In this document: positions 1,858-32,055 of the stretch, one piece after another | Position numbering within the stretch: the first letter of the stretch is position 1 | Layout: each line of letters starts with the position of its first letter | NCBI GenBank assembly: GCA_016748015.1 | Contig: JAAOMT010000478.1 | Coordinates: forward strand, 1 to 43,864 | Direction of reading: 5' to 3' | Length of the DNA: 43,864 bases | Source of the DNA: Geosiphon pyriformis uo1 | Taxonomy: Eukaryota > Fungi > Glomeromycota | The notes under the pieces: model-generated | What the model was told of the DNA's origin: nothing | Databases searched by the model: none | The model's input: the letters and a program-made list of their open reading frames with translations, nothing else | Position numbers and translations under genes: made by a program

Positions 1858-4790
1858 TTAAACATAATTAGTGAGTTTTTTAATATTATTAATATTGTAA
1901 TTATTTAAACAAAGTTATTATTATATTTATTAATATTAAAATTAAAGATATTTTATTAACCATTAGCAGCTTTTTAATTTTTGTTGTAAAGTTTAATAAG
2001 TTTTATAAATATTTAAAAAAAAATTTATAAATTTTTGATCTTTTTAAACTATATTTTAAAAAAACAAATAAGAATATTAAGTTTTTATATTATAATTTTA
2101 TGCAAAACTATTTAGATAAATAATTCTTATATTTGGTTTTTGTGGTATTTTAGTTTATTATAAATTATAAAATTCAGTTTAGTTTTATTAACAAAAATAT
2201 TTGTAATTAATAAAATTGTCTAATCAAAAAAATTTTTAGGTAAAAGACAAATTTGTTTTATAATTTTCTAAATAAAGTTTTATATTACTTATCTTTTTAT
2301 AATTTGAAGCTTTTTAAACAAGTTTAAACTAAAAAAAAATTATATTAATTATACTTTTTATTAATGCTTTTAGAATTTTAAACAAAATTTTCAAACACAA
2401 ACTTTTGAATTTACAAATATTTAGTTAGACTTTTTACAATCTGTTGTGTTTTTTTGTTAGGCTTAAGATTTTTTATTTAAATAATTTTTTGTTCTATAAA
2501 GTTTTTTTTATTGTTAACATAGTTAATCTTTTTTGGCTTAATAATATTTCTGTTTTAAATATTCTGAGTTATTTGGAGTATTTTAGAGTAGTTAAGTTTT
2601 TTAAGTATTTTAAAATAGTTTTTGCTAATTAATTTTTAAATAGTTATGATATATGTTTTTTATGAAAAAATTTTTGGTATTGAAAATATCTAGATTTTAA
2701 AAACTTTATTTTATCATGATTTTTTTTAGTTTTAAATTTTATTATTACTGGTAATTTTATTAAATTTTTTTTAAATAAGTGGTTTTTTTATTAATATAAA
2801 TGTATTAAATTTAAAGAAATTTGTTTCTATATATTTCAATTTAATAGAAACAGATGTATTAAATTTTACTGTTTTTATAAACAATTTAATAAAAAGTTTT
2901 AGTTTAATTTCTGTTAAAATAATATTATAACTTACTTAATAATTTAAAAAAGAAAATTAAAGTTAATATTTATGGTTTTTTATCTTTAATTTTAATTAAG
3001 TTATAAGTAATAATATTGACTTTTAAATATATACTGTTTTCTATTAGTGTTTTAATATATTTAAATTGTTAAATTGGTTTAAATACATATTAAACTAAGT
3101 TGATTTTGTTTATGCCAAACTTTTATAATTTTTATTGAATTAAGTATTATTATATTGTTAACATTATTAAAAATAAAAACATTTTAGTAAAATAAACAAA
3201 AATTAAAAGATATTTTAATATTTAAAATAATGATTATATTAAAAAATTAGCAAATAGTACCTTTTTTTTAAGTTTAAAATTATTTTTTAATATTAAAAAG
3301 CAATTTTTGATTATAAATAGCAATATTATTTTAAATAATACTTATTGTTTATTAAATTGTTAAATAACACAATTTGTTAAGTTTCTTAAAAAATAAATTC
3401 TGATATTAGTATTATTGATATTTTTTGCTAATAATATTAATTGAGCTATTATTTTAATATAATACTTTAATTTACATATAATTTTAGAGTATATTAGTAA
3501 AGTTTTAATATGTTTATATACTTATATGCTAAAAACTCTATATAATGAACTTCTTGTTATTATTAAAAAAAATTATATAACAAATATTATCTTAGTATAT
3601 TATATATAAACTACAATAAAGTAGAAACATTTAATTACAGCTTTATTTGTTGTTTTAATTTTCTTGTTTATGTAAGTTTATTAGCTAATAAAACAAAATT
3701 TTGAAAGTCTTTAATTAGAACTAATTTGGTTATTTTAATTGTTCTTTAATTTTTAGTTTTTAATACCAATAATATTAGTTTTTATATAATTTTATACAGA
3801 AGTTTTATGTTTAATTTATAAATAATTAAAACCAAGTTTGTTTTTATTAATAAACTGGTTTTGTTATACTTAATTAATTTTATTCAAAATTTAATAATTA
3901 GTTATAGAAAAAAAGTATGGTTATTTAATTTTATGTATTATGCTTTTATAGAAAAAAAAAATTTTGTCTGATATTAAATCAAGTATGTTATTTGTTTAAA
4001 GTTTTTTAATTCTTATTTTCAAAAGAATAATATATTTGTTAAATATAGTTAAAAGTCATATAGTTAATTTTGGTTTTAAAGTTAAGTGTTTATTTTTTAC
4101 TAATATTAATTTTAATGTTTTTGTTAATATAGCTATTTAGTATTATTTTAATTAACTAAGTAACTGATTACATATAATAAGCATATAAATTATATTTAAT
4201 TTAAAATTCAAAGCAGTTATATTGTATTAAATAGTAATAAATAAATAAATAAATAAAAATTAGTTTGTATTTATTTTATACTTGATTATTTAATTTCTAT
4301 TATAATTCAGACTTTTATAAAAAACATAACTTAATATAATATATATAAATATAAATATGTTCATAATTTTGTAAATAAAATTCACAAAAAAAACAGTTTT
4401 ATAATTTATACAAATGTTTAATATTATTATTATCTTATTTTTTAATATAAGCCAAATAAAAAAAAGATCCAAAAATAAAAAATTGATTTTAAAACAATTC
4501 AAAAGATAATAATATAAATATATTTAAAATTTAAAAACTTTTATCAAAAACTAAAAATAAGAAAAAAAAGTTTTATTATTATTATAAATATAACTTAAAT
4601 ATTAATAAGAATATTAACAATATATATGATATTTTTTTTTAAAAAAAAATGAAATTTATTATGACTTTTATTATATAAAAAAGATACAACTAAAACTAAT
4701 AACAATAATAAAAATAATAATAACAATGCTGAAATGAAATAAGATTAACAAGCACTTAAAACATACAGTTAAATGAACACTTAAAGAATT
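1858..4790. other. AT desert, probably hypermutated repeat relic
   Basis: Very low GC, CpG essentially absent, no credible ORFs; composition changes near the gene island. Confidence 0.7.
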
Positions 4791-23087: not shown

Positions 23088-24122
23088 ATGAAACTCTGGA
23101 GCGCGGCAAACTTTTCTGACCAGGGAACTATGGACGAAGATAACCCTTTCGAATGTTTCAAGCTGACGCGTACACAACGTTTATATGGCTTTGGTATATG
23201 GTAAACAGCTTAAAGATTTTCTTTTAAGCTTTTTCGACATGAATAGTCTCCAATTGAAATGACTCATGAGCTTTTTTGAACTATTCTCAGCTTCGTTTCC
23301 GGTTTCTTAATTAGTATTCTGGTGATTTTATTCTCTTATGAGTCATTCATGAAAGTGGGAATAAAAATTTTACACATATTAATAATTTTGGTGAAAAAAG
23401 TCAACTCTGACGCTCATATCAGGAAATATAGTCGGCTTTGCCATTTTATATACGATTGGTAATGTCGTGTCTCTTCTCAGGTAAGAGTTTTCAACATATA
23501 GCCGTATTTTTACGATCGTTCATCAATTACATTTTCTTCAAATAATTCAATTAAAGTACCGGATTTCTTGTCGGTTTTACAAAGCAAATCAAGACAATGT
23601 TCGCCCCAGGTATATAAAAACTTTAAAAGTGCATGATTTGGTCGAAATATATCTAATTCTTTCAATTTGAATTTTCAGTTCGTTGGGTTGCATCTGCTGT
23701 CTTTCTTGGGTCAATGGTAACTACTTTAATTGTAGCTTTCTTGGTATGTATTCATTCTTTTATTCATTGCGAGAAAACATATGGCAAGATATTTATTAAT
23801 GATATTTTAATGAATAGTTGGAGATCTTCATTCTTTGTTTGATTCTGTGCGTTGTTCAATTTCTAGCCTTATTTTGGTACAGGTAAAGTACTCAAACCTG
23901 AAAATTAAATACTTTTAATAATTAACGAGTCGTTAAAAGTGACTCAAACAAACATTTTTTCTTTCATTTCTAGCGCAAGTTATATTCCTTATGGCCGGTA
24001 AGCAAATAAAGATTTAAGTTAGTCTTTTGTGAATATAACTTCATCTTACTCATTTTTATCATCTTTTCAATAGAACAATTATCAAGAAAGTATTTGGCAG
24101 TTGCGTTGAGAACATAGTATAA
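23088..24122 (+). CDS. SFT2: Got1/Sft2-family vesicle transport protein (SFT2D1-like), 8 short exons; absent from the ORF track
   Basis: FKLTRTQRLYGFGIC...FAILYTIGNVVSLLSTGFLVGFTKQIKTMFAPVRW...VQFLALFWYSASYIPYGR. Confidence 0.88.
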
Positions 24123-24200
24123 AGTGCGAGATCTCCTTAAGTATAAGAATAGTCTCAAAGTTTCAACCCCAAAATGGACTTCATAACATTACTTAGGATA

Positions 24201-24232
24201 ATAGTATAGTATAGTATAGTATTGTATTGTAT
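24201..24232. repeat. (ATAGT)4(ATTGT)2 pentanucleotide microsatellite
   Basis: Read directly from the sequence. Confidence 0.8.
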
Positions 24233-24507
24233 AATTCGCGTGAGTTTTAATTATCTTATTTATTTACATGTCCACTCATAATTTTTTAGTCGAGGAAGTG
24301 ACTTGTCTTAAAAAAGCTTAACTTAATATTGCAGTAATGATATTTTCCAAAGTATTAACTCCAATTGTTTTATTGTCATTTTATTTGGCGGAATCCAATA
24401 AAAACCAACATTCATGTGTAATATATTTATATGAAAGGATTGTCATTCTTTAAATTACCAAATATATTTTTTATTTACATTTGACCATTTTTATTATTCT
24501 ACCCTCA

Positions 24508-25967
24508 ATGACTGAGCAAGCGACACAGTATGTTTCGATCATTTGTACCAAGACTTGTTTGCAAATTTGTACCTATGACAACCAGCCAGAATTCGTTACT
24601 GTTATCAGCACGTAGTAGAACCTGCCTTTCTCGATCTTCACTAATGACAGAACTAAATCAACGAAATTTGGTTGGTTGTCAAAGGTAAATTAACAAGCCA
24701 AAACAAGAAAGCCTTATCAAATAGAAGGCCCAGCTGCTTATGTAATTTATTTGTTATTTTTTGCATAGTCACAAAAAGTCTCTGGTGTATACAAGGACCG
24801 GAGACGCTGGTACGGCAATGCTCGTGAATGTAGGAGGGGTGATTTATTTCTGAAAATTTAATTTTACTTAACCTTATATGATCTATTGTTTGTTTTAGGT
24901 ACTTCCAGCTTGTATAATGGTGAGCGACGACTAAAAACCGACGAAATTTTTCATGCGTTGGGGGACGTTGACGAACTGAATTCAAGTGTAGGGTAGGTGG
25001 AACTGTTCTTTGATTCAACAGTTGAATTGAAAACATTGTTGGATCTTTAAAAAGACTTTTATTTTAATTATTTCTGCAGAATTGCCAATCATTATTGCAA
25101 AAAAGTTCAGAATGGGTTGGAAGATCGATTGATCTGGGTACTTGAAACAAATTCAACATGAAGATTTTTTACCCATAATTCGATTTTCTAATGCGTTAAA
25201 GTCTATGTCTTCAAATGGAAAATGGGTTTTTGAAAGATTCAATGCAAGCTGATTGAACTATCTTCTAATATCGCCACACCTCGTGCCACGTCTGGTGACG
25301 CTAAATTGGGCACGCTATGAAAAATTTTTATCTTCGACCATTTGAAATCACACAAAATTATGCCTAGAACTGAACATTCTTGTCCTTATTTCAGCATATA
25401 CTGCATTCGAAGCAACGAATGTAGACACCTTGGAATCATGGATTGATGAGCTGGACGAGGTTAGTGTTTCTGAAGGATGATATAAATTGGTTTTTACTAA
25501 TTTGCTCATCCATTTAATTACAGCAACTTCCTCCGCTGAAACATTTCATTCTACCGTCGGGAGGCGAGAGTGCTATCTTTTTGCATCAATGCCGATCGGT
25601 TTATATCATATAATTCTGTGCATATTTATTGATAATTGTTAAATTCATTTTTCAAATCTCTCGCTCGATAGATTTGCAGAAGAGCTGAACGTGCTGTCGT
25701 ATGCGCAGCCCAAAAAGGTGTTACAGATCTTGATGTTCAACGATTTCTGAATCGGTAAACTTTTCAGATTTAAAAATAAACCATAAAACCAAACTTTCAA
25801 TCTGAAATATCTACGGAAATTTGGACTTTAATAGGTTGAGCGATTTCTTTTTTGTCGCCGCTCGATTTGCCGCAAAATTTGACGGCTCAACAGAAAACTT
25901 TTACCAGCAACGACGAAAAGATAAGGAGAGTAGTTTGGTGACGCGTGAACTGAATGACAGCAGCTGA
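24508..25967 (+). CDS. MMAB: ATP:cob(I)alamin adenosyltransferase (PduO/MMAB type); alternative starts at 24508 and 24530; absent from the ORF track
   Basis: [40 protein letters not shown]..., [26 protein letters not shown] and [15 protein letters not shown]; stop TGA at 25965-25967. Confidence 0.93.
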
Positions 25968-26453
25968 TCTTTCATGAGCTGGAAATAATAGCCATCATAT
26001 AATCGAACCAAATTTGCAATTTTTTTATAATTACACTTTTGATACAATTTTGGCTTATCGCAAATTTACTCAAACTGAAAATTTACCCATGACCAAAAAA
26101 GCGGCCCACCATTGACTATGGAACTTAACTTTATTCCAAAAATGTTTAAAAAGTCCTTTTTTCTGTTATATCCCATCTCACTTCTATCCCATCACTCTAG
26201 ATAGCATTAATCTCCAACCCAACATCTTCACGGCTAATATGTACAACAACACGCTCTTTGGGCATGTCTTCTGATTTTTCCAAATAAGAAAAAAGCTACG
26301 GAGCAAAAACCACGAGGTTAAGGATAAAAACATAAAGGAACGTCGTTGGAGTGGGAAATAAACTTTGGTGGTGACAGCGGTTATTTTTGGTTATTTCGGA
26401 AATAACAATAATTATTATGATTACTAGTACGGAATCTTGATATATCATTTGCA

Positions 26454-29524: not shown

Positions 29525-30399
29525 GCACATGATTGGCAATCTTGGAGGTTTCGAACTTTTGATTTCTCGACTTGATAATGCAAGAAAAACAATTGGATTT
29601 TGGAAGGTAAGCCAAAAATTGCGAATTTCGCAAGCCAAATGGCAACCCTAATCTTCAAAGATGGGAAAGAAGAGATTGTCACGCGAACGTTTGCGCGTAT
29701 AGTCCATTTGTTCGGAGAGTCATTTGAGGACTGACGCATAAGCGGATGATTGTTGAGTTTCAGAAGATTTCATATATACCGGCTGCTTGCAGCAATGGAA
29801 TATAATTTGAGGGCCAATATTATATCAAATATATTGGGAGGAGAGGACGAAAATGGTAGAATCAACGAGAATAGTTGAACCCAGAGGGTTTAAGCACTTC
29901 TTATAATGCAGAGTCAAAGGGAACATTTGAACAGCTAGCAAAATTCGGGATTTGATTTGTTTCAAATTATTTTGCATCTGCAATCCTAGGTTATTGTTTT
30001 TAACGTAAATTAAAATTTTTCATGGAAATTTATCATAATTATATTTTTAAACAATAATTGTCGAGTTCCCTTATATCATCATCCTTGCAACCCTTCCATT
30101 GGCATTTAAATAGGCAAAGTCAAATATTTCGGACGAAAATCTGTTACACAATAACATCCTCAGTAACGTGATCTCCCACAAAAATAATTTTAGTAATCAA
30201 TCCAAAAGTATAACTCAGGCCGTGACTTAGTTGTTCGGGTTTATTCAATTTGGTTTGCGTTGGCTTTATTTTGTTTGATCTTTTCATTTTTTATCTTGAA
30301 TAAAGCATTATTATATTCATAGTTAGATCTTTTAACCCGTGATATTTTATGATTTTCATTCAATTCTTAATTCTTTTAATTTTTTTATTGGTTGATTAT

Positions 30400-31926
30400 T
30401 TTGTTTATCACTTAATCTTTTTGCTTTAACAAAATATGATTTAATTATTAACTATTTTTAAGCATGTAATATATATTGTAATTAGAAATAAATTATATAC
30501 TTTTTACACATAACCAGTCATTTGAATTTACATTAAAATTACATTAAGTTAAACATTAAAACTTTTTCAAATTATTGTTTATTTTAATTTTAGTAGCTTT
30601 ATAACTTTTTAAATATAATTTTTTTAATAAGCTATAATTGCATTAAAGTTATTTTAATCTTAGAAAATACTAATTTTTTCTATTATAACAAAAACATAGA
30701 ATTATATATTAATAAATATTTTAATACAATTAAGTAAATTGTTATTTAAGTTTTAAAAAAAGCTTTATATTTCTTAAGTAAAAATAAAAAATTTCAGTTT
30801 TATACTAAAATTATTAAAATCAAATTTTAAATTAAGCTTTTAAAAAATAATTTTTTTATTAAGTTTTGTAATAATAACCAGTAAATATTTATAAATTGAA
30901 AAATTAAATCAATTTTTTTAATAAATTTAAAAAAACCAGTATTATAAATTAAAACCAAATTTTTTGATTTTAATACTTGTAATAATATTAATAATTAATT
31001 AATTAATTATTATTTTTATTTTTACAAAATAAACAAAAAATAATATAACTTTAACCAAAATAAAAAGTAAATAAAAGTATTATATTTTATAAATATTAAA
31101 CTAAATAATACTTAAAAACTTTTTAAAGAAAATTAATAAACAAAAATATTAAAAACACATTGTTTTTAAATAATCTTAAAAAAAATTGTTTATAATTATA
31201 TTAAAAATACTATATTTGTTATTAATAAAAATTATTTTTTTATTTAAATTTTTATATATAATTAACTATTTAAATTTATGTTAAAACATTATTAAATTGA
31301 ATTAAAAAAAGCCAAAAAAAAGTTCAATTTACAAATTTTATTAACAGAAATATTCAAATAATAACTATTAAAGATAAATTGACTTATTTATTATAATAAT
31401 ATATTTACTTAAAAAATATGTTTTTATAATATTTATTTTATTATTATTTATTTAATTAAAGTTTATTTTAGTCTTAAAATTAGCAAAATTTTTAAACAAA
31501 CTAATTAAAATTAAAGCAAAACTTTTAATAATATCATTTTTTTAACCAATTTAGTTTTTGTTTTAAAATTAAATTGATTATTTATAGTTAAAAAAAAATA
31601 ATCAAAGTAACCAAAAAACTAATTAGTTAAATAACAGATTTTATTAATATAATTAACTTAAAAATTTAAAACTTCAAAAAATTTAACTTAAAATTAATTA
31701 TAAAATTAATAATTGTAATAACAAAAATAATTAAAAATTAATAACAAAAAAAGTCAATAATATAAAAGTTTTGATATATAAATTAAAACTAATAAAAAAA
31801 ATATTAGAATTATTTACAACTTAATTAAAAACTTAATTAAAAAAAATAAAAATATCTTATAATCAAATAATTTAAACTTTAATATTTATAATAACAATAA
31901 TATTCAAATTTTTTTTATTAATATAT
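30400..31926. other. AT desert, probably hypermutated repeat relic
   Basis: A hand count over 30481-31140 gives roughly 11% GC with no CpG. Confidence 0.75.
31911..31926. repeat. Target-site duplication, left copy (TTTTTTATTAATATAT)
   Basis: Identical 16-mer at 38654-38669; abuts the poly(A) tail of the LINE. Confidence 0.7.
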
Positions 31927-32055
31927 TTTTTTTTATCATTTAACAAGTAAAGTCCAAACACTACTTAGTACTATACATCAAAGAAATGATTTAAACTAAG
32001 CACAAATTATGTACTTTCTACATGTGACCAGCCATTCGAGCCAGTCAGGACAACA

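What the first reader, a model, noticed from the sequence alone, without database searches (positions are those of the whole stretch)
24508..24811. B12 adenosyltransferase with a built-in mitochondrial/cytosolic switch: the second start codon sits inside a splice donor
Seen: ATG 24508 opens a 20-nt exon (ATG ACT GAG CAA GCG ACA CA) followed by a canonical GTATGT donor at 24528. Splicing to the acceptor at 24768 gives in-frame [19 protein letters not shown], the bare catalytic domain. The ATG within that donor (GT-ATG-T, 24530) opens a 155-nt exon, [41 protein letters not shown].... This peptide is R/S/L-rich with no acidic residue for 40 aa, and the exon splices at 24685 in the same phase to the same acceptor. 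Known: animal MMAB is mitochondrial and serves methylmalonyl-CoA mutase. Inference: mutually exclusive isoforms would place adenosylcobalamin synthesis in both compartments. That implies a cytosolic client (for example a class II ribonucleotide reductase, if encoded) or a B12-trafficking role, possibly regulated by donor or TSS choice.
Basis: partly seen in the sequence, partly recalled or inferred. Interest (0 to 1): 0.82.

Follow-up and report, generated by a model that had tools for sequence, protein, structure and literature searches.

The report
B12 enzyme gene with splice switch
The single vitamin-B12 adenosyltransferase gene of the fungus Geosiphon pyriformis can make two proteins, one with and one without a mitochondrial address tag, by choosing between two splice donors, and this layout is kept across the arbuscular-mycorrhizal fungi.

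Summary
ATG 24508 opens a 20-nt exon. It is followed by a GTATGT donor that contains a second ATG (24530). That ATG opens a 155-nt, 52-codon presequence-like ORF ending at a second donor (24685). Both donors share the acceptor at 24768 in the same phase.

The window is a whole contig of Geosiphon pyriformis, and the gene is its only MMAB (PF01923).

A spliced RNA contig shows the short junction 24527^24769. The long junction was not seen in that single run.

Nine taxa, covering all orders of Glomeromycotina sampled here, carry the same nested layout in their DNA:
- The first exon is 11, 14, 17 or 20 nt, always phase 2.
- Donor 1 is invariably A|GTATGT.
- The second ORF is open for 44-54 codons and is basic and acid-poor.

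Rhizophagus irregularis has both products annotated (213 and 251 aa). An intron-free environmental mRNA shows the long form with ATG1 still upstream.

New here: the two DNA-conserved blocks of the alternative exon are a 28-nt inverted repeat, and its 3' arm contains donor 2.

No class II ribonucleotide reductase was found. Only MUT and MetH carry B12-binding domains, so a cytosolic client is unknown. Localisation is inferred, not shown.

The parts
24498..24527 (+). First exon, short version. At least 10 nt of 5' leader, then ATG1 (24508) and 20 coding nt (MTEQAT, phase 2).
   Evidence: The RNA contig begins at 24498 and joins 24527 to 24769. Translation. Homologous mini-exons of 11-20 nt occur in eight relatives.
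24528..24533 (+). Donor 1, GTATGT, with the second start codon ATG2 (24530-24532) nested in it. The preceding exon base is A, which is position -3 of ATG2.
   Evidence: It is invariant as A|GTATGT in all nine taxa. The other eight donors of this gene have G at -1.
24530..24684 (+). Alternative coding part of exon 1 (155 nt, 51 codons + 2 nt). It encodes a basic, acid-poor, S/T/L-rich presequence-like peptide. It is intron sequence when donor 1 is used.
   Evidence: ORF. Composition. Homologous N-termini in 10 other Glomeromycotina sequences. Unique in the genome.
24508..24615 (+). Out-of-frame ORF of 35 codons that ATG1 opens when donor 1 is not spliced. It overlaps ATG2, so translation from ATG2 needs leaky scanning.
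   Evidence: The same holds in the relatives (8-36 codons).
24570..24597 (+). 5' arm of a conserved inverted repeat (predicted RNA helix) inside the alternative exon. It covers codons PMTTSQNSL.
   Evidence: the repeat finder I1. In the MFE fold, z = -3.8. Conserved block 1 in alignments A1 and A2.
24660..24687 (+). 3' arm of the inverted repeat. It covers codons QRNLVGCQ and the first three bases of donor 2.
   Evidence: RNAalifold finds the helix on its own. 86% of cells are paired against 14-48% when slid. The helix is in the MFE of 5 of 6 species.
24685..24690 (+). Donor 2 (GTAAAT), which is weaker-looking and variable among species.
   Evidence: gtaaat, gtaatt, gtaaat, gtttgt, gttaga, gtcaga in six species.
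24767..24809 (+). Shared acceptor AG (24767-24768) and exon 2 (24769-24809), which encodes [13 protein letters not shown], the start of the catalytic domain.
   Evidence: Joints. Translation.
24899..25967 (+). Exons 3-9 of MMAB: 24899-24992, 25080-25137, 25237-25309, 25395-25459, 25524-25598, 25672-25754, 25835-25967 (stop TGA at 25965-25967).
   Evidence: GT..AG joints in RNA contigs. In-frame model of 258 or 213 aa. Identical to the C-terminal 205 residues of the annotated protein P0164. PF01923 hit.

Best explanation
This is the single MMAB gene (PduO-type ATP:cob(I)alamin adenosyltransferase) of Geosiphon pyriformis. Its first exon has two competing 5' splice sites that use one acceptor.

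Splicing at donor 1 (24528) leaves ATG1 (24508) in frame. It gives a 213-aa enzyme with a 7-residue acidic N-terminus and no targeting signal, predicted to be cytosolic.

Splicing at donor 2 (24685) keeps 157 more nucleotides. ATG1 then opens only a 35-codon out-of-frame ORF. The ATG nested in the unspliced donor 1 (24530, with A at -3) opens a 52-residue basic presequence in frame with the enzyme. That gives a 258-aa precursor predicted to enter mitochondria and serve methylmalonyl-CoA mutase.

Translation from ATG2 requires leaky scanning past ATG1, probably helped by a very short 5' leader.

A conserved inverted repeat inside the alternative exon is predicted to fold donor 2 into a long stem. 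This would make donor 1 the default choice and could set the ratio of the two forms.

Shown: the layout, its conservation, the short junction in Geosiphon RNA, and the long junction and both annotated products in relatives. Inferred: the two compartments, leaky scanning, and the role of the helix.
For: Sequence and frames.

Organism and family: P0164 is 'G9A89_000066 [Geosiphon pyriformis]' on a contig of 43864 bases, with PF01923. The gene is single-copy.

RNA:
- A spliced contig runs 24498-24527^24769-24808^24898..., with all joints GT..AG.
- An intron-free JGI contig, L022, carries ATG1, the unspliced GTATGT, the presequence and exon 2 onwards.
- R. irregularis has 213-aa and 251-aa products with consecutive accessions that are identical downstream. 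They come from one locus with the same layout.

Conservation:
- ATG1 is followed by 11, 14, 17 or 20 nt (always phase 2), then A|GTATGT, then an ORF giving a 44-54-residue N-terminus. This holds in Geosiphon, Ambispora, Paraglomus, R. clarus, R. irregularis, Diversispora, Dentiscutata and the environmental mRNA.
- In Acaulospora the first exon (51 nt), a candidate donor 2 and the only usable acceptors are all in phase 0.
- The presequences have 6-8 R+K and 0-2 D+E, with the acidic residues late. The other frames are closed.
- The short peptides are acidic, with no R or K.

Client: MUT with a basic N-terminal exon, MeaB and MetH are present.

Helix.

Short leaders promote leaky scanning (PMC13219423).
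Against: - In Geosiphon only the short junction was seen, in one run kept as contigs. Contigs drop rare variants.
- No cytosolic AdoCbl-dependent enzyme was found. There is no class II RNR, and B12-binding domains occur only in MUT and MetH.
- Several fungi that have MUT appear to have only a short, presequence-less MMAB model (Table S1 of PMC8085122). The short form might therefore still serve mitochondria.
- ATG1 as an overlapping upstream ORF should depress translation from ATG2 and could expose the long mRNA to decay.
- The context of ATG1 is not uniformly weak (-3 is T, T, A, T, A, C, A).
- Covariation support for the helix is weak. There is one compensatory pair and the shuffle control is not significant. 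Dentiscutata does not fold it in its MFE.
- No dedicated targeting predictor was available.
Confidence: 0.72

Rival explanations
1. Both products end up serving mitochondria, or the short form is imported by an internal signal. In that case the two N-termini tune amount or import efficiency and do not define two compartments.
For: No cytosolic AdoCbl client was found in this genome. MMAB models of Mortierellomycotina, Kickxellomycotina and Paraphysoderma have only short acidic N-termini, although several of those lineages have MUT (Table S1 of PMC8085122).
Against: An acidic N-terminus with no R or K is unlike a presequence. If the short form could reach the matrix, it is hard to explain why a separate presequence exon stayed open and in phase in all sampled orders of Glomeromycotina. 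Mucorales keep MMAB without MUT, which points to a role that does not depend on MUT.
Confidence: 0.17
2. Only the long, presequence-bearing protein matters. On this view ATG1 plus donor 1 is a regulatory device, an upstream ORF with unproductive splicing, and its in-frame product is incidental.
For: Animal MMAB has a single mitochondrial product. ATG1 acts as an overlapping upstream ORF on the long mRNA.
Against: The mini-exon varies in length only by multiples of three (11, 14, 17, 20 nt) and always stays in frame. Acaulospora shifts the exon, the donor and the acceptor together to phase 0. The short form is the assembled RNA species in Geosiphon at k-mer depth 112. The same MxSE/MTDD-type mini-exon is the only form in Mortierellomycotina.
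Confidence: 0.06
3. In Geosiphon the presequence ORF is a relic that is no longer used. Only the short isoform is made.
For: No contig of the one available run covers 24534-24768.
Against: The ORF is intact and both donors are intact. The conserved blocks and the helix are the best-paired of all species, 13/13 and 6/6. P(open by chance) is about 0.02-0.04. MUT and MeaB are retained and need AdoCbl.
Confidence: 0.05

Closest known systems
[quoted passage not shown]
   Same: It belongs to the same family and has the same catalytic core (YTRTGDxG... motif, PF01923). It is a presequence-bearing precursor that serves methylmalonyl-CoA mutase. The human enzyme is described as mitochondrial (PMC8633584, abstract).
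   Different: Animals are described with one mitochondrial product. Here an upstream mini-exon and a donor that contains the second ATG give a second product without a presequence, and this is conserved across Glomeromycotina. No paper found in six literature searches describes a presequence-less MMAB isoform.
Alternative-splicing-controlled targeting: Yarrowia lipolytica MDH2 (PMC3372373), human cytoplasmic MECR (PMC9815647), and events in Saccharomycotina such as PTC7 (PMC7491326; PTC7 is recalled from memory)
   Same: One gene yields two products that differ only in an N- or C-terminal targeting signal, and the choice is made by splicing.
   Different: Here two 5' splice sites compete and the second start codon lies inside the first donor. 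Splicing therefore decides which of two out-of-frame AUGs is in frame with the enzyme. The enzyme is a B12-handling enzyme. The event predates the radiation of the sampled Glomeromycotina orders.
Alternative start codon use by leaky scanning on short 5' leaders (PMC13219423, PMC11974929)
   Same: Two AUGs lie close to the cap. Use of the downstream AUG probably depends on leaky scanning, and the outcome is isoforms with or without a presequence.
   Different: In those cases both AUGs are in one frame on one mRNA. Here they are in different frames, and splicing selects which one is productive.
Fungal TPP riboswitch that controls alternative 5' splice sites (Neurospora NMT1; recalled from memory, not checked here)
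   Same: A conserved RNA structure lies next to one of two competing 5' splice sites in the first intron region of a vitamin-related gene.
   Different: There is no match to any Rfam riboswitch. No ligand pocket is evident, because the element is a plain long stem. Covariation is weak. The structure lies in coding sequence.

Membership tests
[quoted passage not shown] | Match to PF01923 above the curated cut-off | tested here: met
   Exon 3 alone scores 26.1 bits against a cut-off of 24. The six-frame genome search gives 31.7 bits. The annotated product P0164 carries PF01923.
[quoted passage not shown] | Collinear full-length similarity to MMAB proteins, including the N-terminal (V/I)YT(R/K)TGDxG motif | tested here: met
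   A local BLASTP of the exon model gives 60% identity over 191 aa to Paraphysoderma MMAB P0038 and 41-56% to further full-length hits. The motif [10 protein letters not shown] is present.
[quoted passage not shown] | Adenosyltransferase activity and hand-over of AdoCbl to the mutase | not testable with these tools
   This needs an enzyme assay. MUT and MeaB are present in the genome.
Dual-targeting genes that work by alternative 5' splice sites | Two donors compete for one acceptor, and both give an open frame into the common part | tested here: met
   The same holds in six further genomic loci and in R. irregularis.
Dual-targeting genes that work by alternative 5' splice sites | Both junctions are observed in RNA of the organism | tested here: inconclusive
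   The short junction is seen in Geosiphon. The long junction is not seen there, with only one run kept as contigs. The long junction is seen in the mRNA contig L022 of a relative, and both products are annotated in R. irregularis.
Dual-targeting genes that work by alternative 5' splice sites | One N-terminus is a mitochondrial presequence and the other is not | tested here: inconclusive
   Only composition was tested. The long N-terminus has 6-8 R+K and 0-2 late D+E and is S/T/L-rich. The short one has 1-3 D+E and no R or K. TargetP and MitoFates were not available.
Dual-targeting genes that work by alternative 5' splice sites | Different localisation of the two products | not testable with these tools
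   This needs imaging or fractionation.
Riboswitch-controlled alternative splicing (cobalamin or TPP riboswitch) | Match to a known aptamer family | tested here: not met
   A cmscan of 24200-24950 at E <= 1 gave only a chance hit to an unrelated sRNA at E = 0.82.
Riboswitch-controlled alternative splicing (cobalamin or TPP riboswitch) | Conserved structure at the regulated splice site, supported by covariation | tested here: inconclusive
   The helix is found by RNAalifold, by an inverted-repeat scan and in the MFE of 5 of 6 species. 86% of cells are paired against 14-48% when slid. There is only 1 compensatory pair and the shuffles are not significant.

The most novel reading that the evidence does not exclude
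The conserved stem that holds donor 2 may be a true cis-acting switch. It could be opened by a protein, by temperature or by a metabolite, and so set how much B12 adenosyltransferase goes to mitochondria and how much stays in the cytosol. The presequence-less form may then carry out a cytosolic, mutase-independent function of MMAB. That function could be the same one that makes Mucorales keep MMAB without MUT, and in Glomerales it could supply AdoCbl to class II RNR.
Probability: 0.2. Interest if true: 0.85.

Novelty: new variant of a known kind. Interest (0 to 1): 0.68.

Why it matters
In animals, adenosylcobalamin is made only inside mitochondria. A conserved presequence-less MMAB isoform in a whole fungal subphylum would mean that coenzyme B12 is also made or handled in the cytosol.

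This bears on three things:
- how class II RNR of Glomerales gets its cofactor;
- why Mucorales keep MMAB without the mutase (PMC8085122);
- B12 use in mycorrhizal fungi and in the Geosiphon-Nostoc symbiosis.

The design is compact and easy to test. One donor doubles as a start codon, so splicing decides which of two out-of-frame AUGs is productive. A conserved stem at the competing donor offers a handle for studying regulation.

It also corrects gene models. The Geosiphon entry is a chimera with the upstream gene. Several relatives are annotated with only one isoform or with truncated starts.

Tried and rejected
- Chance ORF in an intron: rejected.
- Alternative TSS as the only switch: not needed, since the long mRNA of a relative keeps ATG1.
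- Class II RNR as the cytosolic client in Geosiphon: not found with TIGR02504, TIGR02505, PF17975 or PF02867. The single RNR locus on C583 scores as generic or class I-like. PF08471 was uninformative because its control failed.
- Other B12-binding proteins: only MUT and MetH.
- Known riboswitch: none.
- Repeat or transposon origin of the alternative exon: it is unique in the genome.
- Intron retention giving a presequence in Mortierellomycotina: Entomortierella has an open, in-frame intron, but in Actinomortierella wolfii the nested ATG is followed by a stop after two codons. The feature is therefore not conserved.
- Calcarisporiella and Paraphysoderma lack the nested layout.
- Annotated fusion with the upstream Got1/Sft2-like gene: not supported, because an RNA contig reads through the proposed donor.
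- The representative search with exon 3 gave no 100% self-hit and many fragments. It served only to reach P0038.
One search aligned short peptides copied from earlier output.

Full report
**Observation**

- ATG1 lies at 24508 and opens a 20-nt exon (MTEQAT, phase 2).
- The exon is followed by GTATGT at 24528.
- The ATG inside that donor (24530) opens a frame that stays open up to the TAA at 24686-24688.
- A second donor lies at 24685 (AAAG|GTAAAT).
- The acceptor AG at 24767-24768 serves both donors in the same phase.
- The two readings are MTEQATH|[12 protein letters not shown] and a 52-residue N-terminus ending ...LVGCQS|[12 protein letters not shown].

The long N-terminus has 7 R+K, one acidic residue (position 41) and 13 S+T.

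Chance is an unlikely explanation.
- 51 sense codons have a probability of about 0.015-0.04 at the composition of this gene's introns or of the window.
- The other seven introns have no open frame above 32 codons.
- The two other frames of the 155-nt stretch hold 4 and 2 stops.
- Its G+C (0.38) lies between that of most exons (0.45-0.49; one exon is 0.36) and that of the other introns (0.25-0.33).

**Gene and organism**

I built the model from RNA joints and homology. It has nine exons and gives 258 aa (long) or 213 aa (short).

Exon 3 alone matches PF01923. The genome search finds PF01923 only at this locus.

I searched exon by exon, by reference. The joined spliced protein was sent to no search tool. 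It was only translated and compared locally in scripts.

A representative search with exon 3 led to P0038 (Paraphysoderma MMAB, 60% identical over 191 aa). A word search with P0038 then returned P0164, 'hypothetical protein G9A89_000066 [Geosiphon pyriformis]', on a contig of 43864 bases, which is the length of this window. The organism is therefore Geosiphon pyriformis.

P0164 (359 aa) is a chimera. A Got1/Sft2-like N-terminal part (PF04178) is joined to MMAB as ...GRTIIKK|QATHHKK....

**RNA evidence**

Only one public run holds the stretch. The tool guessed DNA. However, its contigs lack the introns, and every joint is GT..AG, so the run derives from RNA.

One 296-nt contig (k-mer depth 112) reads 24498-24527 ^ 24769-24808 ^ 24898-24991 ^ 25079-25136 ^ 25236-25309. 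The short junction is therefore real, and transcription starts at or upstream of 24498.

No contig covers 24534-24768. Contigs drop rare variants, so this does not show that the long form is absent.

A second contig reads 24073-24188 without splicing at the donor that the chimeric annotation uses. The upstream gene therefore ends on its own.

**Orthologues**

N-termini of annotated Glomeromycotina MMABs fall in two classes.
- Long ones are homologous to the Geosiphon presequence. These are Ambispora gerdemannii, Dentiscutata, Cetraspora, Gigaspora, Diversispora eburnea and R. irregularis (251 aa).
- Short acidic ones are R. clarus (MTDDN...), R. irregularis and R. diaphanus (213 aa).

In R. 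irregularis the two products have consecutive accessions in several assemblies and are identical downstream. The gene range of the 251-aa product starts at ATG1.

I fetched the DNA of the loci. The same nested layout is present in:
- Ambispora gerdemannii (20 nt)
- Paraglomus occultum (11 nt)
- R. clarus (17 nt)
- R. irregularis (17 nt)
- Diversispora epigaea (17 nt)
- Dentiscutata erythropus (14 nt)

In each case the mini-exon is followed by A|GTATGT. The nested ATG then opens an ORF giving a 44-54-residue N-terminus, which ends at a second donor in phase 2. The short introns are 232-250 nt and the long introns 84-101 nt.

The mini-exon differs in length only by multiples of three, and it always encodes an acidic peptide without R or K.

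Donor 1 is invariant. Donor 2 varies: gtaaat, gtaatt, gtttgt, gttaga, gtcaga.

The base before donor 1 is A in all taxa, which puts A at -3 of ATG2. The other eight donors of the Geosiphon gene all have G at -1.

Acaulospora morrowiae at first looked like an exception, because its first exon is 51 nt and in phase 0. However, the only usable acceptors there are also in phase 0, and a phase-0 donor (AGAATG|gtcggt) closes the presequence ORF. This fits a coordinated shift of all three elements. There is no RNA evidence for that model.

**The long mRNA**

L022 is a 1006-nt JGI contig with an uninterrupted 257-aa ORF. It is intron-free, so it comes from RNA.

It begins 6 nt before an ATG1-type codon. 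It then carries a 17-nt mini-exon, the unspliced GTATGT, the presequence and the spliced exon 2 onwards.

The long form therefore shares the upstream start site, and the choice is made by the splice donor.

On such an mRNA, ATG1 opens an out-of-frame ORF that overlaps ATG2. It is 35 codons in Geosiphon and 8-36 codons in the relatives. ATG2 therefore needs leaky scanning.

Both transcript contigs begin only 6-10 nt before ATG1. Leaders under about 30 nt promote leaky scanning (PMC13219423). The leader length is only suggested by contig ends and has not been mapped.

**A conserved stem at donor 2 (new here)**

In DNA alignments of the region, the invariant columns cluster in four places: donor 1, two blocks inside the alternative exon, and donor 2.

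The two blocks are reverse complements of each other. The arms are 24570-24597 and 24660-24687, 28 nt long and 86% Watson-Crick, with 62 nt between them. The 3' arm includes the GT of donor 2.

Further evidence on the stem:
- The Geosiphon stretch folds to -52.7 kcal/mol with z = -3.8, and the stem is its main feature.
- RNAalifold finds the helix without being told.
- It appears in the MFE of 5 of 6 species, with z = -3.9, -3.3, -1.3, -2.5, -3.7 and 0.0.
- For a 19-pair version, 86% of cells pair, against 14-48% when the partner is slid.
- Most substitutions are transitions that keep a G.U pair. There is only one compensatory pair, and the shuffle control is not significant.

The structure is therefore well supported by complementarity of otherwise unexplained conserved blocks, but not by covariation. 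It would explain why a presequence, normally free to drift, keeps the motifs T(T/V/I)(N/S)Q.SL and QR.(L/M)VG(C/S)Q.

My inference is that the stem hides donor 2 and so makes the invariant donor 1 the default. This agrees with the Geosiphon contig. No Rfam family matches.

**Clients**

The genome has the following (the search is exon by exon in six frames, so absence is likely but not proven):
- MUT, with a basic first exon
- MeaB/MMAA
- MetH
- B12-binding domains only in MUT and MetH
- A single RNR large-subunit locus, which fits the general Pfam model far better than NrdJ
- No hit for the RTPR-type class II models

Table S1 of PMC8085122 lists class II RNR in Rhizophagus and Glomus but not in Diversispora or Gigaspora. 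It also lists MMAB without MUT in Mucorales.

Class II RNR can therefore explain a cytosolic form only in Glomerales. Elsewhere the client is unknown.

**Outgroups**

- Mortierellomycotina share a 14-nt MASE mini-exon and a GTATG donor but have no conserved second ORF.
- Calcarisporiella has a 26-nt first exon with a GC donor and no second ORF.
- Paraphysoderma has no intron there.
- Many zygomycete models start with short acidic N-termini.

The short form therefore looks older. The presequence exon may have arisen from the 5' part of intron 1, seeded by the ATG of the consensus donor. This is a hypothesis.

**Literature**

Six searches found no description of a presequence-less MMAB isoform or of this layout. 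PMC11974929, a survey of alternative-start mitochondrial isoforms, does not mention MMAB.

The general principle, splicing that toggles a targeting signal, is known (PMC3372373, PMC9815647, PMC7491326).

**Verdict**

- The compartments, the translation mechanism and the role of the stem are inferred.
- I class it as a new variant of a known kind, of clear interest for B12 trafficking and for mycorrhizal fungi.

Noticed in passing
window 23700-24527 (upstream gene exons ...-23881, 23972-23996, 24073-24188+): The public protein G9A89_000066 (P0164, 359 aa) fuses a Got1/Sft2-like gene (PF04178) to MMAB through a donor at about 24094/24095 and an acceptor inside the mini-exon (...GRTIIKK|QATHHKK). 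An RNA contig reads through that donor to 24188, so these look like two separate genes.
   Followed up: partly
window 25310-25394: Intron 5 of MMAB appears to be a GC-AG intron (TTGG|gcacgc ... ttcag|CAT). Both RNA contigs stop exactly at this junction (25309 and 25394), so the junction itself is not seen. The annotated protein agrees with the GC-AG model.
   Followed up: partly
window 25394-26400 and beyond: The RNA contig that covers exons 6-9 has a k-mer depth of 1622, against 112 for exons 1-5. It runs on for at least 430 nt past the stop codon, and by its length for about 950 nt. This is either a long 3' UTR or an overlapping, highly expressed neighbour transcript.
   Followed up: no
L021:2501-2760 (Acaulospora morrowiae): Here the first exon is 51 nt (phase 0), a phase-0 donor closes the presequence ORF, and the only acceptors near exon 2 are phase 0. 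The mini-exon, the second donor and the acceptor all seem to have moved together from phase 2 to phase 0. The public model there is frame-shifted.
   Followed up: partly
L023:2001-2125, L025:1431-1535, L024:2001-2090, L026:1501-1560: MMAB of Mortierellomycotina shares the mini-exon and the GTATG donor but not the presequence ORF. Calcarisporiella, Paraphysoderma and many Kickxellomycotina models have only short acidic N-termini, even where MUT is reported. This raises the question of where AdoCbl is made in those fungi.
   Followed up: partly
window 24192-24238: A short tandem repeat (tatag/tattg units) lies between the upstream gene and MMAB. The read tool skipped it as a repeat.
   Followed up: no
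window 2001-4000 and 30001-32000: Two blocks have very low G+C (13.5% and 14.2%). The second overlaps a first-reader note on RIP-like hypermutation.
   Followed up: no
other pieces of the same genome (notes s1-486419, s1-518351): Earlier first-reader notes on this genome propose a presequence hidden in intron 1 of FKBP12 and a structured leader upstream of a BtuF/CBA1-like B12 uptake gene. Neither was checked here. The first would be a second case of the same design.
   Followed up: no
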